Made by a program: the position numbers and the translations under genes. This document shows positions 1 to 52,002 of a stretch of 64,000 nucleotides of DNA, piece after piece; position 1 is the stretch's first letter, and each line of letters opens with the position of its first letter. The notes below the pieces were generated by a model. It ran no database searches and had not been told where the DNA came from. It saw only the letters and a program-made list of their open reading frames with translations. The stretch is taken from positions 186,001-250,000 of IMG/VR virus record IMGVR_UViG_3300050120_000152; one strand, given 5' to 3'.

Positions 1-37
1 TAATGGATTGTCAACTACTATATTTTAAGAATACTCC

Positions 38-66
38 TTGCAAAGATTGCCCAAAAGGAATATAAT
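38..66 (+). promoter_or_regulatory. sigma70-type early promoter
   Basis: TTGCAA(38-43)-17 bp-TATAAT(61-66). Confidence 0.75.
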
Positions 67-90
67 GCATTACCAAAGAGGAAAATCGTC

Positions 91-249
91 ATGATTACCA
101 TTCGTCGGTTGCATATTTTTGCATTCATTCTGGGATTTGTGCAGATGTGGCATTTTGGTGATGCAGTGGGTTGTCCTACTGCTGATGATAAAATCTGGAA
201 TGATGCATACGAAAATGGTGCTGACATAGCACAACGCTTGCACCATTGA
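91..249 (+). CDS. small hypothetical protein with hydrophobic N-terminus (52 aa)
   Basis: Hand-translated MITIRRLHIFAFILGFVQMW...QRLHH*; AGAGG at 77-81; promoter upstream; below the ORF-track length cutoff. Confidence 0.55.
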   Translation: MITIRRLHIFAFILGFVQMWHFGDAVGCPTADDKIWNDAYENGADIAQRLHH

Positions 250-266
250 TTCAATTCTGTTATAAT
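238..266 (+). promoter_or_regulatory. sigma70-type early promoter
   Basis: TTGCAC-17-TATAAT. Confidence 0.75.
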
Positions 267-290
267 ACACGCATCAAAAGGAGATTCATC

Positions 291-452
291 ATGCCGAATT
301 TTGTAATCCAACATGAATTTGACTTTGAACCGACATATATTGTCAATAAAGATGATGAAGATCAATACATCAAACTCGATGTGAATATTCCGTGGAAAAA
401 TCGGTTGACTGCTGCGGAAAAGATTGCCAAAATTCTTAATGAATTGGAGTAA
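291..452 (+). CDS. small hypothetical protein (53 aa)
   Basis: Track ORF 246..452; ATG at 291 follows an AGGAG RBS. Confidence 0.65.
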   Translation: MPNFVIQHEFDFEPTYIVNKDDEDQYIKLDVNIPWKNRLTAAEKIAKILNELE

Positions 453-457
453 TAATC

Positions 458-628
458 ATGGTCATTCAACTTGCCGAGTATTGTGACAAACGTGCTGAAC
501 TGACGTTTGAAATCCTTGCAAACTCTGCTAACGGCATGTTGGAACCGCAGCGTAGCAGACTGGTGCGTATTCTCAAGCATTGTCAAAAGGTCAAACGGTT
601 TCAGCGTAAACTGACAAAAGTTGCTTGA
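458..628 (+). CDS. small basic hypothetical protein (56 aa)
   Basis: Hand-translated MVIQLAEYCDKRAELTFE...RKLTKVA*; stop lies inside the next TTGACA. Confidence 0.55.
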   Translation: MVIQLAEYCDKRAELTFEILANSANGMLEPQRSRLVRILKHCQKVKRFQRKLTKVA

Positions 629-654
629 CAATCTGAAATATTGTAGGATATAAA
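621..654 (+). promoter_or_regulatory. sigma70-type early promoter
   Basis: TTGCTT-17-TAGGAT or TTGACA(625-630)-18-TATAAA. Confidence 0.6.
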
Positions 655-673
655 TCAACCAAGGAACATTAGC

Positions 674-835
674 ATGGACAACATTCTTCCCGAAATCAAG
701 TATCGTGGATTGTCCTATACGCTGGACAAAGTTGAAAATGGTGTAGTATACTGGACTTGTCTCTATTCACGCCATACGGATCAATGTTCGGTGGATACGT
801 GGAAGTCTGGCTCCCCCTATGAGGAACGCACCTGA
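674..835 (+). CDS. small hypothetical protein (53 aa)
   Basis: MDNILPEIKYRGLSYTLDKVENGVVYW...; AAGGA RBS; TGA overlaps the ATG at 835. Confidence 0.6.
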   Translation: MDNILPEIKYRGLSYTLDKVENGVVYWTCLYSRHTDQCSVDTWKSGSPYEERT

Positions 836-1110
836 TGAAGCCAAAGACCCTGATTTTCATGCTGCTGATGCTATGCATGGGCATAGCTCATGCGGCACAA
901 TCACACGCATCCTTTTCCATATCGGTTATGGTTGTGGACGCATGTGATACGCATGTATCGAATAGTGGCAAGATTGTTGCGCAGTGTTCGGGAAAGAATA
1001 CCGCAGCGCAGCAGGTTATCACGGTCACACCACCAACACCTGAACAGCTGGCGATGTATGGTGTAAGCTATACATCACAGAATGTGAAAGTCGTTACAAT
1101 AACCTACTAA
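835..1110 (+). CDS. secreted mini fimbrial-subunit-like protein
   Basis: Signal peptide MKPKTLIFMLLMLCMGIAHA, ASFSISVMVV strand, Cys pair, C-terminal VVTITY. Confidence 0.6.
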   Translation: MKPKTLIFMLLMLCMGIAHAAQSHASFSISVMVVDACDTHVSNSGKIVAQCSGKNTAAQQVITVTPPTPEQLAMYGVSYTSQNVKVVTITY

Positions 1111-1115
1111 AAAGC

Positions 1116-1144
1116 TTGCTACTAGCATGTGACAATGTTATAAT
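1116..1144 (+). promoter_or_regulatory. sigma70-type early promoter (extended -10)
   Basis: TTGCTA-17-TGtTATAAT. Confidence 0.75.
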
Positions 1145-1172
1145 AATCCCATCATTCAAGGGAAACCCCATC

Positions 1173-1430
1173 ATGTCGAAAGCATACCGTTTTGAAGTGA
1201 TCCCCCATATGGTTTGGAAACATGCCCTTACTGGTGCACAGGCTTCTATCTATGGTGCGTCTCCGCAGGGTGATGATTGGTCTATTGTGGAAGATGGTTT
1301 TACCTTCCGTGACAATCGTTACAATACGGTGGGCAGCTATGGTGTTCGTGATCGGCGCACTGTCGAGGAAATCGAAGGATACCTTACCACGCAATATGGT
1401 TTCGATTGGCGCTTGCAGCATGCACAGTGA
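1173..1430 (+). CDS. hypothetical protein
   Basis: Track ORF 1116..1430; ATG 1173 follows the AAGGGAAA leader. Confidence 0.65.
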   Translation: MSKAYRFEVIPHMVWKHALTGAQASIYGASPQGDDWSIVEDGFTFRDNRYNTVGSYGVRDRRTVEEIEGYLTTQYGFDWRLQHAQ

Positions 1431-1441
1431 TAGGGTATAAT
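1413..1441 (+). promoter_or_regulatory. sigma70-type early promoter
   Basis: TTGCAG-17-TATAAT. Confidence 0.7.
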
Positions 1442-1447
1442 AATACC

Positions 1448-1663
1448 ATGAAAACACTCATTGCCATTCTGCTCTATCTAGTTCTCTTTGCTGTCATGGC
1501 TCAGAGTGGTATGATTACCTTCACTGGTAGAATTTTGGCAAGCAATGGCCCTAGCATCACGACACAATCTGTCGTAACATCCTCAAATATTCCGCTGGTG
1601 AGTTATGCACTGAGTCGTGTACAAGGTAGCTCAGTCCTCATCAAAACCATTACATATCAGTAA
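1448..1663 (+). CDS. secreted mini fimbrial-subunit-like protein
   Basis: Signal peptide MKTLIAILLYLVLFAVMA, SGMITFTGRI (fimbrial-type GxITFTGxI), C-terminal KTITYQ. Confidence 0.6.
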   Translation: MKTLIAILLYLVLFAVMAQSGMITFTGRILASNGPSITTQSVVTSSNIPLVSYALSRVQGSSVLIKTITYQ

Positions 1664-1677
1664 AGCTAAAGTCTTGT

Positions 1678-1780
1678 GCGAGCCTACCTCTTAAAGGATA
1701 GGACAAAGGTGAATTAACACCTGACGGCTACTCAATGCCGTGCTATCTCCAAAGGGTAGCAGCCTGAATTAACAGGTCGC
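1678..1780 (+). ncRNA. candidate multibranch structured RNA (unassigned)
   Basis: Five contiguous hairpins closed by GCGA(1678-81)/TCGC(1777-80); G-U pairs favour the + strand; no ORF. Confidence 0.45.
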
Positions 1781-1787
1781 CATCCAT

Positions 1788-1814
1788 TGCTTCCCATCCA
1801 CATCCCTATTTTAC
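1788..1814. repeat. 27-bp direct repeat, copy 1 (copy 2 at 6666-6692)
   Basis: tgcttcccatccacatccctattttac is identical at both sites. Confidence 0.95.
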
Positions 1815-1837
1815 ATTACATATAATACAATTGTCAA
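1808..1837 (-). promoter_or_regulatory. leftward sigma70-type promoter
   Basis: Minus strand TTGACA-18-TAAAAT. Confidence 0.55.
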
Positions 1838-1860
1838 TAGATATTATAATAAAATAGTTC

Positions 1861-1889
1861 TTGCATTACGGTACATACTTGTTTATAAT
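1861..1889 (+). promoter_or_regulatory. sigma70-type early promoter
   Basis: TTGCAT-17-TATAAT. Confidence 0.75.
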
Positions 1890-1917
1890 GGCTCATCATT
1901 TAATCATGGACACCAGC

Positions 1918-2256
1918 ATGACTCGCAATGAATTACATAAGCTGCTCATCAAATTGCGCACTATGGTTAAGGCTGGTAACTATCCTTCTAACTATAGGAC
2001 TGGTATCTGTGGCAATTTGGACACGTTATGCGAGTTTTACGTATCGCCGTTAGTACGTAAGTATCAGGAATCATGGACATGGTATAGCGGTGATTGGATT
2101 TTTCCTGTTCCTGCTCCTTCAATGTATGATGATACATACATTGATCCTAAAGCTGGTGCTGTAGCTGTGTATATGAATACCCGCAACAAATGGACAGGTG
2201 AATATGGTAAGCTACGCTTGTCGCTGCTGAACCATCTGATTCGGATGACACGATAA
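1918..2256 (+). CDS. hypothetical protein, paralogue of 5431..5718
   Basis: Shared GIC.N, W...SG...PVP and KW.GE.G..RL.LLN.LIR.TR motifs; start chosen by alignment with the paralogue. Confidence 0.7.
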   Translation: MTRNELHKLLIKLRTMVKAGNYPSNYRTGICGNLDTLCEFYVSPLVRKYQESWTWYSGDWIFPVPAPSMYDDTYIDPKAGAVAVYMNTRNKWTGEYGKLRLSLLNHLIRMTR

Positions 2257-2528
2257 TGCATAATATGTTCATGTTCCTTGCTGACATGCTGAACCATTCC
2301 CCTTGGCATGGAATCATCATGATGGTGCTATGGGTCATTCTGTGGTTGTTCTTACTTACCTGTCTGTTTACATGGTTGTCACCGTGGAAGCCAGACCCTG
2401 ATGGTAATCCATATCGCAGGTATTGTAAAGAATGCGGAACAGGTCAGAGTTTATGGGGCCGAACATACAATGATTATACGGAATGGTGTACATTCTTGCC
2501 AGTGCATCCATGCTCAAAAAAGCATTGA
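2256..2528 (+). CDS. membrane protein with C-terminal CxxC
   Basis: Hydrophobic helix followed by CKEC; coupled to the upstream stop. Confidence 0.65.
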   Translation: MHNMFMFLADMLNHSPWHGIIMMVLWVILWLFLLTCLFTWLSPWKPDPDGNPYRRYCKECGTGQSLWGRTYNDYTEWCTFLPVHPCSKKH

Positions 2529-2553
2529 CAATGTTCTAGCATTGTAGGAGAAT
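2525..2553 (+). promoter_or_regulatory. sigma70-type early promoter
   Basis: TTGACA-17-GAGAAT; the -35 contains the upstream TGA stop. Confidence 0.55.
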
Positions 2554-2560
2554 GTTCCTC

Positions 2561-2656
2561 ATGGAAACCTATTTCACTACTGAAGAACTTGCCCAAGCTG
2601 ATGCCATCCGTGCCGAGCTTGAAACCGCTGAATATCTGGACTATTCCCATGCATGA
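2561..2656 (+). CDS. small acidic protein (31 aa)
   Basis: METYFTTEELAQADAIRAELETAEYLDYSHA*; AGGAG upstream; overlaps the next ATG. Confidence 0.5.
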   Translation: METYFTTEELAQADAIRAELETAEYLDYSHA

Positions 2657-2969
2657 TACCCAAAAGAACTGTCGTGATCTGGCTGATCATCTGGAACATA
2701 ACGTAACGGATGCCGAGTATAATCAGAGCAGTTTTCATTGCGAATCTCGTAATACATCTTGTGCGGCTGGTCATGCTGCATGGGTTGGTATCGGTGGTTT
2801 GGTTATGGATGTATATGATGTTCCTTATCATACCGATTTCGTCAATAGTCTCAGTCGTTATGGAAAATCCATTATCACAGTTTTTGGCGAAGATAAACGA
2901 TATATTTTTCATAGTGATAGGGGTGATTTAACTCGATTGGATGCCATTGATTTGCTACGCAAGGCATAA
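2649..2969 (+). CDS. hypothetical protein
   Basis: Track ORF 2589..2969; likely start MHDTQK; FHCESRNTSCAAGHAA motif. Confidence 0.65.
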   Translation: MHDTQKNCRDLADHLEHNVTDAEYNQSSFHCESRNTSCAAGHAAWVGIGGLVMDVYDVPYHTDFVNSLSRYGKSIITVFGEDKRYIFHSDRGDLTRLDAIDLLRKA

Positions 2970-2971
2970 CC

Positions 2972-3070
2972 ATGATTCTCGACGTGAAAGACCTTACTCT
3001 GGATGTGAGCGTGGAGGAAGCTTTAACGCTCATACAGACGCTTACAATCATGCTGGCAGACCCGTCATAA
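2972..3070 (+). CDS. possible 32-aa ORF overlapping hairpins
   Basis: MILDVKDLTLDVSVEEALTLIQTLTIMLADPS*. Confidence 0.35.
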   Translation: MILDVKDLTLDVSVEEALTLIQTLTIMLADPS

Positions 3071-3210
3071 GGGTTATCAGCAAGTCGTTACTCAAACGCT
3101 TCCATTGATCGTACAGGACGGTTCCAAGCCTAATGGGGAACCTCGTTACATGACTGACTCATTTTGCCTGATGATGGAAAACAAAGGTTGACAAGCCTGT
3201 CCATTGGGGA

Positions 3211-3239
3211 TTGACACGGCAGTTTCTTTGTATTAGAAT
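3211..3239 (+). promoter_or_regulatory. sigma70-type early promoter
   Basis: TTGACA-17-TAGAAT. Confidence 0.75.
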
Positions 3240-3266
3240 GCTTGCCTACTATATAAGGATTTTATC

Positions 3267-3671
3267 ATGTTTGAACTCAATGCTGAACATCAAGCTATTG
3301 TCAAAGGCATGCGCGAATGCATGTTGCATGACTTTAAACGTGATGAAGTTTTTTGGAAAATGGTGGAACTCTGCCCATCGGTGTTCATCTTGGCATTGAA
3401 TGGTGGTATCATTCGTGTTGCATGGCCTGTTCATATTGCACCAACCATCGCAGATTTAGCCTCCGTGCCATGTCTGACCGATGGTGAATATAACATGCTG
3501 CGAAACCATTGCCACGCTAAAGATAAAGTCGCAGCCATCAAAGCATTGCGTGCTATGCGTGGCATGGCTTTGAAGGATGCAAAAGATATTGTGGAAGCAT
3601 GGTTCTATGAACCCGATTCAGACTATGGGAATTCATATTGGCGATTGAAACGGGTTCAGCCTGATGAATAG
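3267..3671 (+). CDS. protein with ribosomal L7/L12 C-terminal-like motif
   Basis: KVAAIKALRAMRGMALKDAKDIVE resembles the bL12 CTD (KI.vIK.vR.itglgLkeAKdlVe). Confidence 0.65.
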   Translation: MFELNAEHQAIVKGMRECMLHDFKRDEVFWKMVELCPSVFILALNGGIIRVAWPVHIAPTIADLASVPCLTDGEYNMLRNHCHAKDKVAAIKALRAMRGMALKDAKDIVEAWFYEPDSDYGNSYWRLKRVQPDE

Positions 3672-3849
3672 CATAGGCATGACCAATCTTTTCCTTTATG
3701 TTGGTGTAGGCTTTGCCATCTTTGATGCATTGTTTTTAATCGGTTATCTCTATGGTAATGACAGACGATACGGAACAGGTGCTGTCTGGAGTGGTGGCCT
3801 TGCATTGTTATGCTGGCTCATTGCTGGACTCATTGCATTCTTTACTTGA
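3664..3849 (+). CDS. small two-TM membrane protein
   Basis: Two hydrophobic segments; stop lies in the next TTGACA. Confidence 0.65.
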   Translation: MNSIGMTNLFLYVGVGFAIFDALFLIGYLYGNDRRYGTGAVWSGGLALLCWLIAGLIAFFT

Positions 3850-3875
3850 CAATCGCTGCGGACTTCTATTATAAT
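3846..3875 (+). promoter_or_regulatory. sigma70-type early promoter
   Basis: TTGACA-18-TATAAT. Confidence 0.7.
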
Positions 3876-3903
3876 AGCCTGAATTCCATACTGGATAGTG
3901 ATC

Positions 3904-4002
3904 ATGGCAAAACTTTCGGATAACCCCACGGGTGTTCATATCCTCATGGCTGTCATCGTGGTGTTACTCATCATCCCATTCTGCTGGATGACTGGTGTAT
4001 GA
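3904..4002 (+). CDS. small single-TM protein (32 aa)
   Basis: MAKLSDNPTGVHILMAVIVVLLIIPFCWMTGV*. Confidence 0.5.
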   Translation: MAKLSDNPTGVHILMAVIVVLLIIPFCWMTGV

Positions 4003-4103
4003 GACTGCGCATTTTTCCACATGAAGCTCCTAACAGCAAATGGTCTGAATATACGATCCCTTTGAATAATTTCAAAGAATATATTGACAACGTAATAAAA
4101 TAG
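3999..4103 (+). CDS. small hypothetical protein (34 aa)
   Basis: ATGA overlap with the previous gene; MRLRIFPHEAPNSKWSEYTIP... Confidence 0.45.
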   Translation: MRLRIFPHEAPNSKWSEYTIPLNNFKEYIDNVIK

Positions 4104-4111
4104 GGTATAAT
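4084..4111 (+). promoter_or_regulatory. sigma70-type early promoter
   Basis: TTGACA-16-TATAAT. Confidence 0.7.
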
Positions 4112-4138
4112 AAACCCATCATCAATAGGTGAACTGTC

Positions 4139-4312
4139 ATGAAAGTCAGAGAACTGATTGCCCTACTTCAAACATTCGATCCTGAGCTGGACGTTAACAA
4201 AACGGACAGTGCTGGTTGCAATGAATGTAATGAATTTGGTGACGATCATTTCAACGATATTTATGATGTACGCCTTTATGAGGTCTATCTAGACAAGCTA
4301 GTTGTATTGTAA
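4139..4312 (+). CDS. small phage protein (57 aa)
   Basis: MKVRELIALLQTFDPELDV..., a common small phage protein N-terminus. Confidence 0.65.
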   Translation: MKVRELIALLQTFDPELDVNKTDSAGCNECNEFGDDHFNDIYDVRLYEVYLDKLVVL

Positions 4313-4318
4313 TAGAAT
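4290..4318 (+). promoter_or_regulatory. sigma70-type early promoter
   Basis: TAGACA-17-TAGAAT. Confidence 0.65.
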
Positions 4319-4348
4319 ACTATTATTCCAACCAACTGAGACCATGTG

Positions 4349-4822
4349 ATGACTTCACCAGTTCGCGGGACGCATTATTCTCTCGCTCAATCTCCCGCTG
4401 AGATGTGGCAGAAAGCTGCTGCTATCGCTGCAAAGCTGATCGCTGATGCCAAAGCCCACAAGGCCATTCCGGTGCTGGCTTATACTGGCATGTCTGGGAC
4501 TGCAACGGCAACCGCAGTTTCGTTGTGGCTGGCAACGAAAAAGCCGAGATTCAAATTTTATATGATCTATGTTCGCAAGCCACGCGAAAAATCACATGGA
4601 AGAAAAATCGAACACAATTTCGAGTATGATTTTCTCATTGACGAAAGCATTACCAAAAAGAAATTTTTCATTGCTTTCGTGGATGATCTGATCTGTTCGG
4701 GTGCCACTAGCAAACGTGTACTAGCAAAAATTGCCGCAGAGTGCAAGACCACCAACTACATGCTGTTCACAAAATTGGCTGGTGCCGTGAACAATGAGGG
4801 ATACTGTACCAGCGATTACTAA
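4349..4822 (+). CDS. type I phosphoribosyltransferase-like protein
   Basis: PRPP-loop motif IAFVDDLICSGAT; YTGMSG loop. Confidence 0.7.
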   Translation: MTSPVRGTHYSLAQSPAEMWQKAAAIAAKLIADAKAHKAIPVLAYTGMSGTATATAVSLWLATKKPRFKFYMIYVRKPREKSHGRKIEHNFEYDFLIDESITKKKFFIAFVDDLICSGATSKRVLAKIAAECKTTNYMLFTKLAGAVNNEGYCTSDY

Positions 4823-4831
4823 AAAGAATGC

Positions 4832-4859
4832 TTGACATGGGCTAGAATTCTTTTATAAT
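4832..4859 (+). promoter_or_regulatory. sigma70-type early promoter
   Basis: TTGACA-16-TATAAT. Confidence 0.7.
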
Positions 4860-4890
4860 AGTCCCATACCAACCAACCCGGTCAAGCATC

Positions 4891-5091
4891 ATGATTTTTT
4901 CTACTGATACCAAAGCCTACGTCAATGAATTGTTTGCCGAAACTGCGGCTCATGAAGCGGCATATGCGGAAGCTGGTAATGTGATCATGGTGCCATCGCT
5001 TGAGGTCGAGTTCCCCATCGGTGAATTTCCTTACGATGATGCCGCATTCGAACGCCGTTATCCGCCATCCTATGATGTGGAGTCATTCTGA
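4891..5091 (+). CDS. small acidic hypothetical protein
   Basis: Track ORF directly after a promoter; coupled to 5091. Confidence 0.65.
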   Translation: MIFSTDTKAYVNELFAETAAHEAAYAEAGNVIMVPSLEVEFPIGEFPYDDAAFERRYPPSYDVESF

Positions 5092-5384
5092 TGGCTGTCC
5101 AGTATGAATGGGATGTGGAAACTGTCTCATGGGATGAAATCGACGGTGATCAAGTCATTGATCATTATCACTGTGTGACCTTCAAGGAAGCTCTACAACA
5201 GGCGGCGACAACTCCTGAAGATGGTTGTCGCCATGTTGTCGTGCTGGTGCGTGACGACGTTGCTGGAAGGCTCTGGGCCTATGTGGATGATATTGGTAGA
5301 ATATCGCCCATTTTCAGGGATAGTCAAGATAATGTGGCGATGTTGGTTCCTCAAAAATATCTCAGGGAAGTGTTGACAGCCTGA
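5091..5384 (+). CDS. hypothetical protein
   Basis: Track ORF; TGATG coupling. Confidence 0.7.
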   Translation: MAVQYEWDVETVSWDEIDGDQVIDHYHCVTFKEALQQAATTPEDGCRHVVVLVRDDVAGRLWAYVDDIGRISPIFRDSQDNVAMLVPQKYLREVLTA

Positions 5385-5400
5385 TTCATTCTGTTATAAT
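5373..5400 (+). promoter_or_regulatory. sigma70-type early promoter
   Basis: TTGACA-16-TATAAT. Confidence 0.7.
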
Positions 5401-5430
5401 ACATTCAACCAATCACTGAGAGTATCCACC

Positions 5431-5718
5431 ATGAACCGCAAGACTTATCACATGCGTCTGCTCGCCCTGCATGACTGTGTGAAGGCTGAAGACATTCTTT
5501 ATCCTAATAGAGGCATCTGCTTTAACGTGTCAAGTCTGGGTAAGACAGATTCCGCTGCTTTCAACTTGACGGACAAGTATGCAATGGGTTGGCCGGAACA
5601 TTCAGGCATCACAAACCGCCCTGTACCGTTCGAATATGGCGCTGACCTGAAATGGGTAGGCGAAGAAGGTGCATCGCGTCTGCGACTGCTGAACTATCTC
5701 ATTCGCAAGACGCGCTGA
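5431..5718 (+). CDS. hypothetical protein, paralogue of 1918..2256
   Basis: Shared motifs, see paralogue. Confidence 0.7.
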   Translation: MNRKTYHMRLLALHDCVKAEDILYPNRGICFNVSSLGKTDSAAFNLTDKYAMGWPEHSGITNRPVPFEYGADLKWVGEEGASRLRLLNYLIRKTR

Positions 5719-5722
5719 ATGC

Positions 5723-5751
5723 TTGACAGGATGATATAGTTCTATTAGAAT
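5723..5751 (+). promoter_or_regulatory. sigma70-type early promoter
   Basis: TTGACA-17-TAGAAT. Confidence 0.75.
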
Positions 5752-5782
5752 ACTCCCACACCATCCAACAAGGCTCAAGCCC

Positions 5783-6091
5783 ATGTCCATCCTGAATGCC
5801 ACCATCGCCACCATCGCCACCATCGCCACCATCGCCACCATCGCCTATTGGTTCAGCTTCCGTGGTGAAGATCAAGAAGTGCTGTGCCTGCGCGATGTTA
5901 ACAGCGATGGCCCGTGGCATGATGCCTTTGCCTATATCCATATCGTTACTAACGGCTCCTGCCGTCACGATGATCAACTGTACAACATCATGATGGAGCT
6001 TGCTGACTTGGCTGACAGTGCATCCATCTATGCGCTTGAAATCAGCGGCGACGTGGCCTATAACGAAGCCTATCGTGGGTTGGATGCTTGA
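5783..6091 (+). CDS. N-terminally anchored hypothetical protein with (ATI)n repeat
   Basis: Track ORF; follows a promoter and C/A-rich leader like its neighbours. Confidence 0.65.
   Translation: MSILNATIATIATIATIATIAYWFSFRGEDQEVLCLRDVNSDGPWHDAFAYIHIVTNGSCRHDDQLYNIMMELADLADSASIYALEISGDVAYNEAYRGLDA
5798..5845 (+). repeat. 9-bp tandem repeat (gccaccatc)x5 + gcc
   Basis: Read directly from the sequence. Confidence 0.95.
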
Positions 6092-6116
6092 CACTCTATA
6101 ATAATCCCTGTATACT
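6088..6116 (+). promoter_or_regulatory. sigma70-type early promoter
   Basis: TTGACA-17-TATACT; the -35 contains the upstream stop. Confidence 0.7.
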
Positions 6117-6143
6117 GCACCCATCATCAAGGGGAACTCTGCT

Positions 6144-6317
6144 ATGTCATCTGCCACTGTCGCCTCTCTCACCGCTGGACTGACGCTGTTCGCTATTGAA
6201 CAGTACAATGGTCACTGTAAGGCCGTGTACTCTGATGGACGTAAGCTCATCATCTCCTATGCTGACGCTGCTCGCCTATCTATGGCGCATACCGTTACCA
6301 TCCTCAACAAACGATAG
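6144..6317 (+). CDS. small hypothetical protein (57 aa)
   Basis: MSSATVASLTAGLTLFAIEQYNGHCKAVYSDGRKLII...; AAGGGG RBS. Confidence 0.55.
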   Translation: MSSATVASLTAGLTLFAIEQYNGHCKAVYSDGRKLIISYADAARLSMAHTVTILNKR

Positions 6318-6324
6318 GCCAATT

Positions 6325-6555
6325 ATGCTCACCCTGCTAACTATCTTCTATATCTGTGCTGCATCCTGTGCTATGGGCATACTGTGTGCTACACTGTGTA
6401 TCATCCTTGCCTCTGTCTTCACTGATGACAGACTGACCACTTCCATCCCTCAAGCATTCAAGCATACTGCCAAGCATCTGGGTTATTGGTCAATAGGTAC
6501 AGGCTGTGCTGCTATCGTAGCATATAGCATACTTATGTGTCAATGGTTGACATGA
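6325..6555 (+). CDS. small two-TM membrane protein
   Basis: 3' part of track ORF 6196..6555; two hydrophobic helices. Confidence 0.6.
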   Translation: MLTLLTIFYICAASCAMGILCATLCIILASVFTDDRLTTSIPQAFKHTAKHLGYWSIGTGCAAIVAYSILMCQWLT

Positions 6556-6575
6556 CATAACCTTAGTGCTATGCT
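6547..6575 (+). promoter_or_regulatory. sigma70-type promoter with no downstream ORF
   Basis: TTGACA-17-TGcTATGCT. Confidence 0.6.
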
Positions 6576-6581
6576 TATCAT

Positions 6582-6641
6582 GCGTCACGGGTCACAGTAA
6601 CCAAGAGCCTAGCATATGTTGGCGCATGTGTCTAGGCTTTA
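6582..6641 (+). ncRNA. candidate small RNA ending in a 13-bp hairpin
   Basis: Upstream promoter, then hairpin agcctag-catatg/catgtg-ctaggct (6606-6638) followed by tt. Confidence 0.35.
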
Positions 6642-6665
6642 CTATGTCCTATGCTGTCACTGCTA

Positions 6666-6692
6666 TGCTTCCCATCCACATCCCTATTTTAC
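6666..6692. repeat. 27-bp direct repeat, copy 2
   Basis: Identical to 1788-1814; contains a minus-strand extended -10 TGgTAAAAT. Confidence 0.95.
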
Positions 6693-6699
6693 CATAGCA

Positions 6700-6887
6700 T
6701 AGCTGAACGTACCATGAACAGGCTGGGCTATCGTTCAGCTAGGGTACAGGTAGGGTGTGGTATGCTATACATGCTGAGACAAGTTTAAGTTTTTAATCAA
6801 TTACTTTTTTTATTTAATACAATAGCCCCCTATACCCTAGGCTGAGCCTGAACGTATATCAAATCAATATAAAAATTTTTTTATATT
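6700..6887. repeat. nested inverted repeats around an AT-rich tract
   Basis: tagctgaacg 6700-09 / cgttcagcta 6732-41; taccctag..ctgaacg 6833-54 mirrors 6732-46; aatataaaaa/tttttatatt 6866-87. Confidence 0.75.
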
Positions 6888-6956
6888 TTTATTTCTAGTA
6901 AATAAGTTTTTCATTAATATTATTGTTTACTAAATAGTAGATAATGGTATATAAAT

Positions 6957-7574
6957 ATGAAACATAAAGTAATACATAATTGCAAATGTGGAGAAACTGA
7001 CTCTACCAAATTCTACAAATATAGAACATATGAATGTAAAACTTGTATAAGTAGAAAAAATAAAGATAATTCCAATTCTCGTAGACGATGTAGTTGTGGT
7101 GAATGCGATCCATTAATGTTTTATAAACGAAGATGTAGTAAGTGTAAGAAATGTACTCGTGAAGATAGAAAACAAGAATATAAAAATATAATGTCTGATG
7201 ATGCAAAGCGGCTAACCAAAATAGAATATAATATAGCTTATCAAAAAGCTAATATATTCAAATATAGATTAACATCAGCAAAACGAAGAGCCATGGATTG
7301 GGACAGAGAATTTGATCTTGACGAAAATTATTTAAAGGAATTATTTAAATACCAAAATGGTTGTTGTTGTTATAGTGGAATACCCTTTGATATAGATGAC
7401 AAGAATTTTACATGGTCTATAGATAGAGTAAATAGCGTCAAAGGTTATACTAAAGACAATGTAGTGTTGTGTACTAATATAATGAATATTATGAAAGGTA
7501 GTCTAACTATAGAAGAATTTTTGACTATTAGTAAAAAATTTATAGAATATCAAAATCATATTACAGGCTTTTAG
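6957..7574 (+). CDS. HNH-like homing endonuclease with N-terminal Cys clusters
   Basis: CxC/CxxC repeats; SIDRVNSVKGYTKDNVVLCTNIMNIMKG nuclease motif. Confidence 0.8.
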   Translation: MKHKVIHNCKCGETDSTKFYKYRTYECKTCISRKNKDNSNSRRRCSCGECDPLMFYKRRCSKCKKCTREDRKQEYKNIMSDDAKRLTKIEYNIAYQKANIFKYRLTSAKRRAMDWDREFDLDENYLKELFKYQNGCCCYSGIPFDIDDKNFTWSIDRVNSVKGYTKDNVVLCTNIMNIMKGSLTIEEFLTISKKFIEYQNHITGF

Positions 7575-7694
7575 GCTAATAAAATTTTTTCTGGACAATT
7601 TTTTAGTGTTCGGTTATGATGTATTGACATGACCCTAAAAAATTTTTGGAAAATTAATGTATCTTAAAAGAGAAGATGTATATAAAACTAGTGC

Positions 7695-7712
7695 TGAGAC
7701 AAATTTGTCTCA
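7695..7712. repeat. 18-bp perfect palindrome
   Basis: tgagacaaa|tttgtctca. Confidence 0.9.
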
Positions 7713-7846
7713 ACTGTATACAAAGATTAAAGAATGCGAACAATATTAGAGAAGAATTGTCCCATAGACATATGAACTGGTTGACTAATTGAATTGTAAT
7801 CTGCTACACTTTTGGGGACTATAACTGTTTGGTGAGGAAGATGCCC

Positions 7847-8365
7847 ATGTTTGATTGGTTCAAGAAAGATGATAAGACGAAAGAGTCTAATAAGATAGTC
7901 GTTCCAAAAACATTGCAAGCGAATCAATATTTGGGTAATTATGTTGTAGCAGAATCCCGAGAAATGAGTACGATTATTTATGAGGGCGATGTACAAACAT
8001 GGTTAAAGAGTGGAACCCTGAATGAATTTTTTTATTGTCACGCTAGAATGATGAAAAATATGATCGGTGATTCTTATATTAAAGCATCCGATTCGTGTAT
8101 ATTATTTAATATGCATGATACTAAGGGTAAATCGCAAATGTTCAGATGGAATGCTACTCCATCAGCCGTAACGGGTAATTTATCGTGGTATAATGATATG
8201 CTCGCTCGCGTGGAGGATTTATCAGGTTTACCTATTGAAGAATTTACTCATGGAACCTTTCATTATTTGTCTGATCTGGAAATGAAAGAATTTTTGAATA
8301 AAAATTACGGTTCAACTACATCCGTGTTGTTTAATATGCCTTATGTAGGTATAACATATTTTTAA
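7847..8365 (+). CDS. 'IEEFT' paralogue family member 1
   Basis: WYNDMLARVEDLSGLPIEEFTHGTFHYL; ATG start after GAGGA. Confidence 0.8.
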   Translation: MFDWFKKDDKTKESNKIVVPKTLQANQYLGNYVVAESREMSTIIYEGDVQTWLKSGTLNEFFYCHARMMKNMIGDSYIKASDSCILFNMHDTKGKSQMFRWNATPSAVTGNLSWYNDMLARVEDLSGLPIEEFTHGTFHYLSDLEMKEFLNKNYGSTTSVLFNMPYVGITYF

Positions 8366-41957: not shown

Positions 41958-44198
41958 ATGGCAACTATAACATATAAATGCAACATATGTGAAAGAAATA
42001 TTGATTTACTTGAAAATCCAATAGGACTAACCACATTTTCTAAATGTGTTATTACATACGGCTGCAAAGGTAAAATGTTATCGGTAAAACGTAATCAAGA
42101 TAATATCCGCGAAACTTTTCCCGTTGAAGTTCCGGGATTGATAGATTATAGTCCGCGTAACGTTCTATCAAACTTCAATCAAGTTATCCCGCTAACTACA
42201 TGGGTCATTACACACAATTTAAATACCATTCCGGTGGTAACAGTGTTTGTAGATAATACCACTGGTACGCAAACTGAGCTAAATCCTACTCAATTTACGG
42301 TTATTCCTATAAATTCTAATCAATTGAAAGTAGTGTTTACGACTGCATATAGTGGCTCGATACAATTGATTTCGAGAAATTCTATAAAAGTTAATCCAAC
42401 TATTGCAGCAGCACCTACTATATTAACACAAGTAACCTCTAATGGAAATTTTGTATTTGCTGTTCCAAAATATTTAACGAAATTTTCGTATCCACCTACA
42501 GTATTACCTGCTCCGGGGTTACCTTATGATTTAGCTTCTACCAAATTGAGAATAGAAGTGAGTATCCAGAAACCAAACGAAGAGACAATTGTTTGCACTG
42601 AATTTTTAAGCACTGATCTTAGTGGAACACCTTGGAATAGTTGGAATAGTATTTTAGTAAGAAAAAGAAAAAATTACTATCTATTTGCTATCAATATATT
42701 AAATTTTAGAACTTTTGGTGGTAATACTACACAATTTAACGATATTCCAGATGGAACCCGTTTACAAATAACCAGAGTAGATTATGGTACTGGTGTATTA
42801 CAACCAGTCGATACCGAAGGTTTATTTATTATGTTATCAAACTCGCCTTATACCATTAATGATAAAATAAAAGATTCAATTGTTGATGTTGGTGATATGG
42901 TAGATAATAATATTAATTATTTTACTTATAACACATCAGATTTTTTTGTCGATCCATCAAATGTAGATAGGACATATCCTGATATTAGTAAGGTAAATCC
43001 TGTAATCCCAGTAATTGCCCCCTTACCATCAATAACACCAACTATAACGCCATCAATAACCATAACACCATCAGTAACTTTAACACCACAGGTCACTCCT
43101 ACACCTACTCCTTCACCAATACCTTATAATTTACCCCCATATTTGGCTGAACTTAACTCTGATGGTACACCAGATACACATTTCATAGATAAACAATTAG
43201 ATTCTCATATGTATGTTTCATATGAAACTTCTGATGGTCATATCTACTTCGGCGGGGATACATCCACGTCCATTCCCGGTAATTATTCTTACCTAGGGCG
43301 TCTAAATTCTGATGGATCAATAGATACTACATTTACCAACTATAATTTAGATTATGATGTTGAAACAATATATCAAACTGCTGATGGTCACATTTATATA
43401 GGTGGAAACTTTTCCACGTTTAATGGTATATCTGTACGCGGATTTGTTCGATTAAATTCTGATGGATCATTTGATAGCACATTCGCTGGTGGGTGCGATG
43501 GTGATGTTATCACGATATGCCAAACTTTAGATGGTCATATTTATGTTGGCGGTGCTTTTAACACTATATGTGGAGCTTCATATAATGGTATTGCTCGACT
43601 ATCTGCAACAGGGGTAATTGATAGCACATTTATAGCACCAGTGTCAAGTTCTATATCAGTAAATTGCATCATACAAACTATTGATACCAATATTTATGTT
43701 TGTAATGCCTCCAATCCCACTACATATACTAATTTTTGTAGGTTGACTTCTGCTGGTATACTAGATACGTCTTTCACTGATTTGACGATTGATAATATAG
43801 TCAAGGTGGCATATCAAACTTCTGATGGATCGATCTACATTGGTGGCAGTTTTAATAATGTAGGAGGGTATTCCTACCCCAAGCTCGCCAAACTAAATTC
43901 GGATGGCACCATTAACAATGCATTTGCATTATCTAAACCCCAAGTAATATCAAATATAGAAATTTTTGGAGTAATATCAACTACCTATGTATACGCTATT
44001 ATGCAGGCTATTGATAGTAAAATTTATATAGGTAGTGACAACGTCTACATAAATGGAAATTCTTATACATATTTTAGTAGATTAAACTCTGATGGATCAT
44101 TTGATAATACATTCAATTCATTGAATTTAACTGGTAGTGTATATAATATTAATAAAATATCCTCTGGGGATATCTACATTTCTGGTGCATTTAATTAA
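41958..44198 (+). CDS. structural protein: CxxC N-domain/HNL module/TP linker/7 Delta-60 (DUF5122) repeats
   Basis: YKCNIC..KCVITYGCKG; W.ITHNL; 7x RLNSDG-type repeats. Confidence 0.8.
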   Translation: MATITYKCNICERNIDLLENPIGLTTFSKCVITYGCKGKMLSVKRNQDNIRETFPVEVPGLIDYSPRNVLSNFNQVIPLTTWVITHNLNTIPVVTVFVDNTTGTQTELNPTQFTVIPINSNQLKVVFTTAYSGSIQLISRNSIKVNPTIAAAPTILTQVTSNGNFVFAVPKYLTKFSYPPTVLPAPGLPYDLASTKLRIEVSIQKPNEETIVCTEFLSTDLSGTPWNSWNSILVRKRKNYYLFAINILNFRTFGGNTTQFNDIPDGTRLQITRVDYGTGVLQPVDTEGLFIMLSNSPYTINDKIKDSIVDVGDMVDNNINYFTYNTSDFFVDPSNVDRTYPDISKVNPVIPVIAPLPSITPTITPSITITPSVTLTPQVTPTPTPSPIPYNLPPYLAELNSDGTPDTHFIDKQLDSHMYVSYETSDGHIYFGGDTSTSIPGNYSYLGRLNSDGSIDTTFTNYNLDYDVETIYQTADGHIYIGGNFSTFNGISVRGFVRLNSDGSFDSTFAGGCDGDVITICQTLDGHIYVGGAFNTICGASYNGIARLSATGVIDSTFIAPVSSSISVNCIIQTIDTNIYVCNASNPTTYTNFCRLTSAGILDTSFTDLTIDNIVKVAYQTSDGSIYIGGSFNNVGGYSYPKLAKLNSDGTINNAFALSKPQVISNIEIFGVISTTYVYAIMQAIDSKIYIGSDNVYINGNSYTYFSRLNSDGSFDNTFNSLNLTGSVYNINKISSGDIYISGAFN

Positions 44199-51800: not shown

Positions 51801-52002
51801 ACTAAATTCTGATGGAACATTAGATACAACATTTATAGGTGGTGGGATAAGTAGTGGTATACGAGTGCTACAACAATCTACAAGTGGAAAATTATTGATA
51901 GGTAGACATTCTGCGATAGAACTGTATAATTCTGATGGAACTTTTGATAGTGATATTATAACTAGTAATGGTAACATCATGGCACTATTGATTAATAATT
52001 AA
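48850..52002 (+). CDS. fibre/spike-like protein: 'INFRQGI' N-domain/TP linker/14 Delta-60 repeats
   Basis: 14 RLN[SA]DG-type repeats; ATAAATA upstream. Confidence 0.85.
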   Translation: MLINFRQGIINAQINNNFLQLVNGNVNINVDVDRVDLAFAYGNHNYLFTEAQQVLSAWNGLPSNQTAYLYWDIDLISGIRTYGFTVVAPSFGGQYPSSPLINQHFFNYTTNKMYVWSGTIWQEKLRVFAGSVQDNAILVANGLGSQVNLYGQVNLGYILFNSQNKPLRITDNTNIFYFVTTEDEIHTQQDLNNAYKIDALLMDGRAIEPIPAFSCITWKGPKQTGVASYVDYQRPCIGIAAESSGVDEVKQFVTKGFLTNYINWNFDVPPSTPLFVGITGQVTTSVPQQYSLQRIGHVVSPNTIFVNIEEIILLESFQTTPTPTPSSSPTPTLTPSPTPSVTPTATPVIPSGFSLYAGGAMSNVGGILGIDSLNADGTLNTAFTNLQVDGYVDYMYQTADTKIYTLGSFTSIGSHYFPTFARLNSDGTFDTTFTAITFNSEPLDMHQTADGKIYLVGNFSEVEGDTTTYTNGLVRLNSDGTLDTSYTPPTFGTFPYLSTLYQTADGKIYIGGTFTTTVDGNNYNSLIRLNADGTLDTSFTNLLLDNDVSKVYQISSGKIYIAGDFTTVGGNSYSNLARLNSDGTVDTTFTAITFNNPVYSVYQTIDNKIYVVGSFTTLNGNTFQNLARLNSDGTVDSTIGNLQLAGQAYNVTQTADGKIYVGGNIVQSVIGTAGVYNMVRLNSDGTYDNTFIDSLKFSGTINNILQISNGTIYVASNGMAQAYNNMVRLFSSGTVDITFTELGLQQTYGEVDALLRSHVDNKIYMGGQFMQVEALNYRSLARLNADGTLDTSYTNYDIIGGVLDLYQTVDDKIYVSGNFNSVGGATYNYLARLNADGTLDTSMVDLALNNIVNSIYQTIDNKIYVGGGFDSSSTVGFNSLNRLNSDGTLDTTFIDVAFPADYSIYYITQTLDGKIYVGGQFSTVGVSTYNHLARLNSDGTLDTTFTDLGLNGNVFAIYQTVDGKIYIGGDFVAGGANTYDYILRLNSDGTLDTTFIGGGISSGIRVLQQSTSGKLLIGRHSAIELYNSDGTFDSDIITSNGNIMALLINN

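What the first reader, a model, noticed from the sequence alone, without database searches (positions are those of the whole stretch)
835..1663. Two secreted mini-pilin mimics among early genes
Seen: both ORFs have Sec signal peptides and mature chains of only ~55-70 aa. One has a fimbrial-type N-terminal strand (SGMITFTGRI) and the other ASFSISVMVV. Both end in TITY/TITYQ. Known: chaperone-usher pilins end in an alternating strand with a (pen)ultimate Tyr that binds the chaperone groove. Inference: these stripped-down pilin decoys could jam chaperone-usher assembly (superinfection exclusion or receptor removal) or seed surface fibres.
Basis: partly seen in the sequence, partly recalled or inferred. 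Interest (0 to 1): 0.7.

Follow-up and report, generated by a model that had tools for sequence, protein, structure and literature searches.

The report
Phage mini-proteins with pilin-like ends
A 340-kb phage from peat encodes two tiny secreted proteins whose ends copy the strands that bacterial chaperone-usher pilus subunits use to dock on their chaperone and on each other, so they may jam pilus assembly, but this rests on sequence motifs and one docking prediction only.

Summary
ORF1 (835-1110, 91 aa) and ORF2 (1448-1663, 71 aa) have Sec-type signal peptides and mature chains of 71 and 53 aa. They end in TITY and TITYQ.

ORF2 is the strong case.
- Its mature N-terminus, GMITFTGRIL, scores like a real donor strand of classical pilins. 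It ranks 1st of 1168 phage ORFs.
- Its C-terminus scores like a real classical pilin F strand and also ranks 1st.
- 0 of 200,000 shuffles reach both scores.
- A complex prediction puts ORF2 residues 62-71 along the FimC G1 strand, with Tyr70 and Gln71 at Arg8 and Lys112. The score is 0.75 against 0.25 for the best control.

ORF1 is weaker. Only its C-terminus resembles a pilin, and it resembles the archaic (SCPU) type, in which the aromatic residue is last.

Neither ORF is a pilin family member. No Pfam, NCBIfam or HH-suite match passes, both are too short for the Ig fold, and there are no homologues anywhere. The closest known architecture is the uncharacterised E. coli pair YmdA and YehE.

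Best reading: these are periplasmic pilin-end mimics that engage host chaperone-usher machinery. The function is inferred, the host is unknown, and nothing has been tested experimentally.

The parts
625..654 (+). Probable promoter for the up53-ORF1 pair: TTGACA, 18 nt, TATAAA
   Evidence: Read from the sequence. The consensus scan does not list it because the -10 hexamer ends in A.
674..835 (+). Upstream 53-aa ORF with no signal peptide; its stop overlaps the ORF1 start
   Evidence: It matches phrog_29069 at E = 1e-19. The TGATG overlap is seen. The annotated frame is the best of six by codon usage.
835..1110 (+). ORF1, a 91-aa secreted mini-protein. The signal peptide is residues 1-20 (nt 835-894) and the mature chain is 71 aa with Cys37 and Cys51.
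   Evidence: ORF and sequence. It is an orphan. The Cys-Cys spacing is 14, like YmdA and YehE at 13 and unlike pilins at about 40. The Atlas feature search places it with 80-100-aa secreted and 'fimbrial' proteins of Pseudomonadota, at 0.92 for the whole protein and 0.85 for the mature part.
1081..1107 (+). ORF1 C-terminal strand NVKVVTITY, with the aromatic residue last (archaic/SCPU type)
   Evidence: The SCPU C-terminal PSSM gives 11.1 bits, rank 1 of 1168, and 27 of 200,000 shuffles reach it. The classical PSSM gives -6.2. In archaic pilins the F strand is one residue shorter than in classical ones (PMC4654587).
1116..1144 (+). Promoter-like site TTGCTA-17-TATAAT with an extended TG, upstream of the middle ORF
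   Evidence: Listed by the consensus scan with 10 of 12 matches.
1173..1430 (+). Intervening 85-aa ORF with no signal peptide and no family match
   Evidence: The annotated frame is the best of six.
1430..1449 (+). Conserved -10-like element ATAGGGTATAATAATACCAT, ending at the ORF2 ATG. It would give a leaderless or nearly leaderless ORF2 mRNA.
   Evidence: A 90% identical copy lies at 4100-4119. The spacing was read. Function is inferred.
1448..1663 (+). ORF2, a 71-aa secreted mini-protein (alternative GTG start at 1427). The signal peptide is residues 1-18 (nt 1448-1501) and the mature chain is 53 aa with no Cys.
   Evidence: ORF and sequence. It is an orphan. AF2 predicts a signal helix followed by four beta strands at pLDDT 65. 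The annotated frame is the best of six.
1508..1537 (+). ORF2 donor-strand-like motif GMITFTGRIL, starting at mature residue 3
   Evidence: The PSSM from 21 K-12 pilins gives 14.2 bits, rank 1 of 1168. An HMM of mature pilins gives 4.1 bits, reached by 6 of 2000 shuffles. hhalign gives E = 0.0023 over the N-terminus only.
1634..1660 (+). ORF2 C-terminal strand VLIKTITYQ, with penultimate Tyr (classical pilin F-strand type)
   Evidence: The PSSM gives 9.8 bits, rank 1 of 1168. It is predicted to pair with the FimC G1 strand, with Tyr70 and Gln71 at Arg8 and Lys112.
1664..1860 (+). Non-coding spacer after ORF2 with a row of hairpins and a 27-nt exact repeat (1788-1814)
   Evidence: The fold z-score is -2.2. 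The repeat is D4. There is no Rfam match. Its role is unknown and it marks the end of the gene group.

Best explanation
ORF2, and less certainly ORF1, are phage-encoded periplasmic mini-proteins that copy only the interaction strands of chaperone-usher pilus subunits.

Proposed steps for ORF2, all inferred except where a prediction is named:
- After Sec export and signal-peptide cleavage (inferred from sequence), ORF2 is a 53-residue beta-rich chain.
- Its first strand has the donor-strand pattern of classical pilins, G-x-Phi-x-F-x-G-x-Phi-Phi.
- Its last strand has the classical F-strand pattern, Phi-x-Phi-x-Y-x-COOH.
- The C-terminal strand is predicted to zip onto the G1 strand of a PapD/FimC-type chaperone, with its carboxylate at the Arg8/Lys112 anchor. 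This step is a prediction, not a measurement.
- ORF2 is too short to form a pilin Ig domain with an acceptor groove. Two consequences follow (both inferred). It could occupy chaperones as a competitive decoy. Or, if it is delivered to the usher and inserted through its donor strand, it could end the fibre, because no further subunit can add to it.
- The net effect would be fewer or shorter host pili during infection. The benefit to the phage is unknown. Candidates are exclusion of pilus-dependent phages, removal of a receptor, or detachment of the infected cell.

ORF1 carries the archaic (SCPU-type) variant of the C-terminal strand plus a 14-residue disulfide hairpin. It may do the same to an archaic chaperone.

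The nearest known proteins by architecture are the uncharacterised E. coli mini-'fimbrial' proteins YmdA and YehE.
For: ORF2 termini:
- They rank 1st of 1168 phage ORFs under two independent pilin PSSMs, with scores at the median of real pilins.
- 0 of 200,000 shuffles reach both scores.
- The donor motif starts at mature residue 3, as in pilins.

Complex prediction with FimC:
- ipSAE was 0.75 in all three runs, against 0.25 for the best control. In calibration that mark was reached by 51 of 78 solved complexes and 2 of 108 mismatched pairs.
- The runs agree in at least 67% of contacts. Partner pLDDT was 48-50.
- The interface is FimC 138-148, which is the mature G1 strand 102-112, plus Arg8 and Lys112.
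- Classical chaperones anchor the subunit carboxylate with two conserved basic residues (PMC4654587).

ORF1:
- It ranks 1st of 1168 under the archaic C-terminal PSSM. The classical and archaic PSSMs exclude each other's families.
- In archaic pilins the aromatic residue is last.

YmdA and YehE:
- They share the architecture of signal peptide, pilin-like first strand, Cys-13-Cys hairpin and terminal Tyr strand.
- YmdA matches FimA and pilin profiles at its N-terminus (hhalign 87%).
- yehE sits beside the yehABCD chaperone-usher operon.
- YmdA overexpression lowers biofilm (PMC7492729).
- The Atlas feature search puts both ORFs with DUF2574, YmdA and 'type 1 fimbrial protein' clusters.

The four codons for TITY differ between the two ORFs, so the shared ending is not a recent DNA duplication.
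Against: - No family profile is passed. Pfam Fimbrial, SCPU and DUF2574, and NCBIfam, all give nothing.
- hhalign gives 12.5% for ORF2, over the N-terminus only, and under 1% for ORF1.
- ORF1's N-terminus is not pilin-like. Its C-terminal score is about half that of real SCPU proteins, and its coding frame is not clearly preferred.
- The complex score may reflect the model's memory of solved chaperone-pilin complexes, and the partner's own fold is uncertain. FimC is a proxy, not the host's chaperone.
- The host is unknown, so it is not known whether it has chaperone-usher pili.
- There are no homologues and no sequence variation among three samples, so conservation and selection cannot be assessed.
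- No expression data exist.
- Alternating beta strands that end in an aromatic residue also occur in other envelope proteins.
Confidence: 0.4

Rival explanations
1. They are small periplasmic or outer-membrane-associated beta proteins with a function unrelated to pili. Examples would be masking a receptor or blocking DNA entry, as other phage-encoded secreted exclusion proteins do. Under this reading the pilin-like ends are generic edge-strand features.
For: No family membership or fold match was found. The phage encodes several other small secreted proteins and lipoproteins. ORF1's resemblance to pilins is limited to its last strand.
Against: ORF2 matches two separate pilin motifs at the correct positions, with a joint shuffle frequency below 1 in 200,000. 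The docking geometry is the canonical one and is specific against controls. None of 164 small secreted ORFs in related phage loci has such an ending.
Confidence: 0.3
2. They are decaying leftovers of pilin genes captured from a host, for example by an internal in-frame deletion that kept the signal peptide, first strand and last strand. They would have no function of their own.
For: They lie in a roughly 28-kb island with GC of 0.39-0.46 in a genome of GC 0.33, which suggests foreign origin. They are orphans. ORF1's coding signal is ambiguous.
Against: Both keep intact signal peptides, open frames and start contexts coupled to their neighbours. No DNA or protein similarity to any pilin remains beyond the motifs. 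No chaperone or usher remnants are nearby or anywhere in the phage. Bacteria keep intact proteins of the same mini architecture, YmdA and YehE.
Confidence: 0.12
3. The C-terminal strands mimic outer-membrane-protein C-termini, with alternating hydrophobic residues and a terminal aromatic. They would then act on the envelope-stress sensor DegS or on the BAM insertase rather than on pilus chaperones.
For: ORF1 ends in I-T-Y-COOH, a hydrophobic-x-aromatic terminus like those of outer-membrane proteins. This rests on my own knowledge of the beta-signal and of DegS activation; it was not tested here.
Against: ORF2 ends in Gln, not an aromatic residue. It also carries a donor-strand motif that this reading does not explain. 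The PSSM scores are specific to pilin types.
Confidence: 0.08
4. The mini-proteins polymerise with each other, donor strand of one into the edge of the next, and seed fibres or aggregates.
For: ORF2 has both a donor-like strand and an acceptor-edge-like strand.
Against: The phage has no usher or chaperone. A 53-residue chain has no room for an acceptor groove. No prediction or data support self-association, and it was not tested.
Confidence: 0.05

Closest known systems
E. coli YmdA (PF27184, annotated 'type 1 fimbrial protein') and YehE (DUF2574, PF10836)
   Same: All four are 90-100-aa precursors with a Sec signal peptide, a pilin-like first strand (GGVIHFYGQIV in YmdA, TLAINGRIS in YehE), a short disulfide hairpin and a last alternating strand with Tyr next to the end. 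The hairpin spacing is Cys-13-Cys in YmdA and YehE and Cys-14-Cys in ORF1. yehE is adjacent to a chaperone-usher operon. The Atlas feature search groups both ORFs with these families.
   Different: No detectable sequence homology: the DUF2574 HMM gives nothing, and hhalign to the YmdA family gives 6.6% for ORF2 and 0.2% for ORF1. ORF2 has no cysteines. ORF1 lacks the Gly-containing donor motif and ends with Tyr as its last residue. The function of YmdA and YehE is itself unknown. Neither has true phage homologues in 50,697 phage records.
Classical chaperone-usher pilins (Pfam Fimbrial PF00419, e.g. FimA, FimG, YadN)
   Same: ORF2 shares the N-terminal donor-strand motif and the C-terminal F-strand motif; YadN ends in the same TITYQ. 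It is predicted to bind FimC in the canonical way.
   Different: The mature chain is 53 aa rather than about 150-160 aa. It has no Ig domain, no acceptor groove and no disulfide, gives no profile match, and is not in an operon with a chaperone and usher.
Archaic (sigma) pilins with the SCPU domain (PF05229, e.g. CsuA/B)
   Same: ORF1 ends with the aromatic residue as its very last residue after a T-x-T-x pattern. A GxxYT lies upstream, like the ...GTYTDTITVTVTY endings of SCPU proteins. It also has a Phe 10 residues before the first Cys.
   Different: There is no SCPU profile match. The N-block scores 0.6 bits. The C-terminal score is 11.1 bits against a family median of 20.7. The mature chain is 71 aa rather than about 140 aa.
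Phage proteins that shut down host type IV pili for superinfection exclusion (e.g. Tip, Aqs1; my own knowledge)
   Same: The same proposed logic: a small early phage protein removes a surface filament.
   Different: Those proteins act in the cytoplasm on the pilus ATPase. The ORFs here are secreted and would act by strand mimicry in the periplasm on a different pilus class. A full-text search found no described phage inhibitor of chaperone-usher pili.
PapH-type pilus terminator subunits and synthetic donor-strand or C-terminal peptides that bind chaperones or subunits (my own knowledge)
   Same: The idea that a subunit able to donate a strand but unable to accept one ends fibre growth, and that isolated terminal strands bind the chaperone cleft.
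   Different: PapH is a full-size pilin encoded in the pilus operon. The ORFs are minimal, phage-encoded and unproven.

Membership tests
Classical chaperone-usher pilin (Pfam Fimbrial PF00419) | Profile match above the family cut-off | tested here: not met
   hmmscan finds no family even at E <= 10. The PF00419 search of the six-frame phage genome finds nothing. NCBIfam finds none. An HMM of 21 mature K-12 pilins gives ORF2 4.1 bits and ORF1 1.6 bits. hhalign gives 12.5% and 0.3%.
Classical chaperone-usher pilin (Pfam Fimbrial PF00419) | N-terminal extension with the donor-strand pattern (alternating hydrophobics and a conserved Gly) just after the signal peptide | tested here: met
   Met for ORF2 only: 14.2 bits, rank 1 of 1168, against a pilin median of 12.3. 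ORF1 scores -0.2 bits, so it is not met there.
Classical chaperone-usher pilin (Pfam Fimbrial PF00419) | C-terminal F strand with penultimate Tyr or Phe | tested here: met
   Met for ORF2 only: 9.8 bits, rank 1 of 1168, against a pilin median of 9.3. ORF1 scores -6.2 bits because its Tyr is the last residue.
Classical chaperone-usher pilin (Pfam Fimbrial PF00419) | Incomplete Ig-like domain of about 150 aa with an acceptor groove, and a disulfide spanning about 40 residues | tested here: not met
   The mature chains are 53 and 71 aa. AF2 shows only four strands for ORF2. Cys spacing is 14 in ORF1 and absent in ORF2, against about 40 in K-12 pilins. The fold searches gave no pilin.
Classical chaperone-usher pilin (Pfam Fimbrial PF00419) | Encoded together with a periplasmic chaperone and an outer-membrane usher | tested here: not met
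   There is no PapD_N or Usher match anywhere in the 340-kb phage genome.
Classical chaperone-usher pilin (Pfam Fimbrial PF00419) | Binds the chaperone by its C-terminal strand and carboxylate | tested here: inconclusive
   Prediction only. ipSAE was 0.75 against 0.25 for the best control, a mark reached by 51 of 78 solved complexes and 2 of 108 mismatched pairs. Contacts agree in at least 67% across runs and partner pLDDT was 48-50. The contacts are with the G1 strand, Arg8 and Lys112. ORF1 was not tested.
Archaic pilin (Pfam SCPU PF05229) | Profile match above the family cut-off | tested here: not met
   hhalign against 40 SCPU domains gives 0.8% for ORF1.
Archaic pilin (Pfam SCPU PF05229) | C-terminal strand ...D-T-x-T-x-T-x-T-[YF]-COOH with the aromatic residue last | tested here: inconclusive
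   ORF1 scores 11.1 bits, rank 1 of 1168, and 27 of 200,000 shuffles reach it. That is well below the SCPU leave-one-out median of 20.7.
Archaic pilin (Pfam SCPU PF05229) | N-terminal block F-x-V-x-a-x-V-x-x-x-C-x-[IV]-s | tested here: not met
   ORF1's FSISVMVVDACDTH scores 0.6 bits against a family median of 17.8.
YehE family (DUF2574, PF10836) | Profile match | tested here: not met
   hmmscan finds nothing. The PF10836 search of the phage genome finds nothing. hhalign gives 0.2-0.6%.
YmdA family (PF27184) | Profile match | tested here: not met
   PF27184 is not in the local Pfam copy. hhalign against an alignment of about 60 Escherichia YmdA sequences gives ORF2 6.6% (E = 0.0055, N-terminus only) and ORF1 0.2%. 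That family alignment is shallow.
YmdA/YehE-like mini 'fimbrial' architecture (descriptive class, not a curated family) | Signal peptide, pilin-like first strand, short Cys hairpin and a terminal Tyr strand, in a precursor of 100 aa or less | tested here: inconclusive
   ORF1 has the hairpin and the terminal strand but not the donor motif. ORF2 has the donor motif and the terminal strand but no hairpin. The Atlas feature search groups them together, at 0.84-0.92 for the whole proteins and 0.85 for mature ORF1.

The most novel reading that the evidence does not exclude
A jumbo phage carries a pair of secreted strand-mimic decoys. One is tuned to classical pilus chaperones (ORF2, Tyr penultimate, with a donor strand). 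The other is tuned to archaic pilus chaperones (ORF1, Tyr last). Together they would shut down both classes of host chaperone-usher pili from the periplasm. This would be the first phage-encoded inhibitor of chaperone-usher assembly. It would also give a natural template for anti-adhesion peptides and a clue to what the bacterial orphans YmdA and YehE do.
Probability: 0.22. Interest if true: 0.8.

Novelty: new variant of a known kind. Interest (0 to 1): 0.6.

Why it matters
Chaperone-usher pili are major adhesins. Their assembly by strand complementation is a long-standing target for anti-adhesion compounds.

A natural 53-residue protein that carries only the two strands used in assembly would matter in three ways:
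- It would show that phages attack this pathway. Only type IV pilus blockers are known from phages.
- It would offer a minimal scaffold for inhibitors.
- It would give a testable hypothesis for the uncharacterised bacterial mini-'fimbrial' proteins YmdA and YehE, one of which lowers biofilm when overexpressed (PMC7492729).

If the resemblance turns out to be only formal, the pair is just two more orphan secreted phage proteins.

Tried and rejected
- **Sequence homology.** The word-indexed search of 5.8 billion proteins found only the ORFs themselves.
- **Full HMMER search, ORF1.** Against 1.84 billion representatives it gave only ORF1 itself plus three long repeat proteins (SpaA, I-set and HYR repeats). 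Their E-values come from summing one weak match over identical repeats, so I rejected them as spurious.
- **Other collections.** tblastn against 50,697 phage records and pattern scans of IMG/VR found nothing. A PDB sequence search gave only chance hits.
- **ORF1 against ORF2.** BLASTP finds no similarity.
- **Fold route.** The single-sequence AF2 models are poor. Foldseek and the Atlas shape search of the ORF2 model gave unrelated beta meanders.
- **Synteny.** 19 viral loci carry a homologue of the upstream gene, and none has a comparable small ORF.
- **Population data.** Three peat runs hold the region with no differences in the ORFs, so no selection test was possible. No RNA run was listed.
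- **Host.** Relatives cannot be drawn for a virus record. The nearest phages infect Ralstonia, Xanthomonas, Stenotrophomonas and Enterobacterales at only about 35-68% protein identity.
- **Rfam.** Nothing in window 1-8000.
- **Alignment-seeded search.** A search seeded with YmdA, YehE, ORF1 and ORF2 returned only Escherichia YmdA and YehE, with no intermediates.
- **Atlas clusters.** The unnamed clusters nearest to ORF1 could not be retrieved as sequences.
Full report
**Setting**

The window is bases 186001-250000 of a 340,344-bp virus record with direct terminal repeats. It encodes T4-like replication genes, namely topoisomerase II and NrdA. It is far from any described phage:
- There is no DNA match among 50,697 phage records.
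- The best protein identities are about 40% to jumbo phages of Ralstonia, Xanthomonas and Stenotrophomonas.

The same sequence occurs in three peat metagenome runs, and the host is unknown.

The finding lies in a roughly 28-kb island, genome 163-193 kb, with GC of 0.39-0.46 against 0.33 for the rest. The island is packed with small + strand genes. Some of these are shared with the jumbo phages XacN1, Xoo-sp13, CM1, GAP32 and CBB. Sigma-70-like promoter matches are enriched, with 22 found against 12.4 +/- 3.4 expected in 4 kb. This fits an early region but does not prove one.

**The observation**

ORF1 (835-1110, 91 aa) starts at an ATG that overlaps the stop of a 53-aa ORF of phrog_29069. ORF2 (1448-1663, 71 aa) follows an 85-aa ORF that has no signal peptide. 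An in-frame GTG at 1427 overlaps that ORF's stop and is the start used by a JGI gene call.

Both have an n-region with Lys, a 13-14-residue hydrophobic core and an A-x-A-type cleavage site (AHA|A and VMA|Q). The mature chains are therefore 71 and 53 aa. The quoted strings are all present.

Codon usage prefers the annotated frame for ORF2 and for the two flanking ORFs. For ORF1 it ties with another frame.

**Are the termini pilin-like beyond chance?**

I took 27 pilin genes from E. coli K-12 with the Pfam Fimbrial model and built two position-specific matrices.

| Test | ORF2 score | Rank among 1168 phage ORFs | Reference |
|---|---|---|---|
| Last nine residues, anchored at the C-terminus | 9.8 bits | 1st (next best 3.6) | pilin leave-one-out median 9.3 |
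| Ten-residue donor-strand core | 14.2 bits (GMITFTGRIL, starting at mature residue 3) | 1st | pilin median 12.3 |

Among 200,000 shuffles of mature ORF2, 43 reach the N score, 57 reach the C score and none reaches both.

ORF1 fails both classical matrices because its Tyr is the last residue, not the penultimate one. In archaic pilins the F strand is one residue shorter and the aromatic residue is last (PMC4654587). I therefore collected 40 SCPU domains from a Ralstonia megaplasmid and 20 genomes. Results under their C-terminal matrix:
- ORF1 scores 11.1 bits, rank 1 of 1168. Only 27 of 200,000 shuffles reach it.
- Real SCPU proteins have a median of 20.7 bits.
- The two matrices exclude each other's families. 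Classical pilins have a median of -14.8 under the SCPU matrix.
- ORF1's N-terminal block scores only 0.6 bits.

As a negative control, 164 small signal-peptide ORFs in 19 related viral loci contain none scoring 4 bits or more.

**Family membership**

Every profile test fails.
- Pfam, PHROGs and NCBIfam scans give nothing.
- The Fimbrial, SCPU and DUF2574 models run against the phage genome do not hit the ORFs.
- An HMM of mature K-12 pilins gives ORF2 4.1 bits, reached by 6 of 2000 shuffles. It gives ORF1 1.6 bits, which is not significant.
- hhalign gives ORF2 12.5% against classical pilins, over the N-terminus only, and gives ORF1 under 1% everywhere.

The chains are also far too short for a pilin Ig domain. 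ORF2 has no cysteines, and ORF1's cysteines are 14 residues apart rather than about 40.

There are no homologues in 5.8 billion clustered proteins, in 1.84 billion representatives, in phage records or in IMG/VR. The repeat-protein hits are artefacts of summed repeats.

**Closest known architecture**

The ESM Atlas feature search pointed to DUF2574, YmdA and 'type 1 fimbrial protein' clusters of 80-110 aa for both ORFs. It also pointed to unnamed 81-102-aa secreted proteins of Pseudomonadota for ORF1, at 0.92 for the whole protein and 0.85 for the mature part.

I read E. coli YmdA and YehE from the K-12 record. They have the same plan:
- a signal peptide;
- a pilin-like first strand;
- a Cys-13-Cys hairpin;
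- a final alternating strand with Tyr next to the end.

YmdA's N-terminus matches FimA models (hhalign 87%). yehE lies next to the yehABCD chaperone-usher operon. [quoted passage not shown] Neither protein has true homologues in phage records.

**Docking test**

- It scored ipSAE 0.75 in all three runs, against 0.25, 0.00 and 0.00 for the controls.
- In calibration that mark was reached by 51 of 78 solved complexes and 2 of 108 mismatched pairs.
- The runs share at least 67% of contacts, and partner pLDDT was 48-50.
- The confident contacts are ORF2 residues 62-71 against FimC 138-148, 43-44 and 148.

Reading fimC from the K-12 locus shows that these are the mature G1 strand 102-112 (TLQLAIISRIK), Arg8 and Lys112. 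This is the canonical site where classical chaperones hold a subunit's last strand and carboxylate (for the two conserved basic residues; the FimC numbering is from my own knowledge).

The tool warns that such a pass may come from memory of solved complexes. It shows likeness, not binding. ORF1 could not be tested.

**Mechanism**

What is shown:
- two adjacent small ORFs with signal peptides;
- pilin-type terminal motifs in ORF2 at both ends, and in ORF1 at the C-terminus only.

What is predicted: canonical docking of ORF2's last strand on a classical chaperone.

What is inferred:
- export and cleavage;
- competition with pilins for the chaperone;
- possible delivery to the usher and chain termination, because a 53-residue chain can donate a strand but has no groove to accept one;
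- loss of pili;
- benefit to the phage.

The phage has no chaperone or usher, so any such action must be on host machinery.

**Rivals**

1. They are generic small periplasmic proteins with another role.
2. They are decaying pilin fragments captured with the high-GC island.
3. They mimic outer-membrane-protein C-termini. This fits ORF1 only.
4. They self-polymerise.

Each is scored in the rival section.

**Novelty**

The proteins are not members of any pilin family. They reuse the known strand-complementation grammar in a minimal, phage-borne form. The nearest bacterial analogues are uncharacterised. A full-text search found no described phage inhibitor of chaperone-usher pili.

I rate this a new variant of a known kind. 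Interest is moderate to high because the claim is directly testable in E. coli. It is held back because the evidence is motifs plus one prediction, the host is unknown, and ORF1 is weak.

Noticed in passing
window 1-7000 (genome 163-193 kb; L007, L008): A roughly 28-kb island has GC of 0.39-0.46 in a genome of GC 0.33. It is filled with small + strand genes, including DUF932, GP88, SprT-like and cell-wall hydrolase genes. Several are shared with the jumbo phages XacN1, Xoo-sp13, CM1, GAP32 and CBB. Its origin is unexplained: a foreign block, or an early region with its own composition.
   Followed up: partly
window 5798-5845: A 9-nt tandem repeat, GCCACCATC, makes about five units in the reference. 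One peat run carries a copy with 9 nt left out, so the repeat number varies between samples.
   Followed up: no
window 1788-1814 and 6666-6692: An exact 27-nt repeat, TGCTTCCCATCCACATCCCTATTTTAC, with unrelated flanks. Contigs of the public runs branch at 1806-1837, so the assembly graph forks here.
   Followed up: partly
window 1430-1449, 4100-4119 and 1138-1158, 4105-4125, 6110-6130: A recurring -10-like element, ATAGGGTATAATAA.CCCAT(CAT), lies directly before start codons. At ORF2 the TATAAT ends 7 nt before the ATG, which would give a leaderless mRNA.
   Followed up: no
window 1664-1790: A row of four or five hairpins follows ORF2 (minimum free energy -41.1 kcal/mol, z = -2.2). There is no Rfam match. 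It could be a terminator or processing region, or a small RNA.
   Followed up: partly
L007:18923-19183 (genome 181923-182183); genome 135336-135566 and 135563-135799: Other small secreted proteins of the phage. One is a lipoprotein in the island (lipobox LVGC). Two are tandem paralogous lipoproteins of 76 and 78 aa elsewhere. None has pilin-like ends.
   Followed up: no
window 6957-7574: An endonuclease VII / HNH-like ORF (GC 0.28) sits exactly at the boundary where the high-GC island ends.
   Followed up: no
window 41958-44198 and 48850-52002: Two large ORFs of 746 and 1050 aa both match phrog_5490 (unknown function) in their C-terminal parts. They are probably paralogous structural or fibre proteins.
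   Followed up: no
L005:5415-5726 and L006:7516-7797 (E. coli K-12): The uncharacterised E. coli proteins YmdA and YehE are themselves mini-pilin-like. YmdA scores 16.3 bits for the donor motif and 10.7 bits for the C-terminal motif. The chaperone-decoy idea could be tested on them too.
   Followed up: partly
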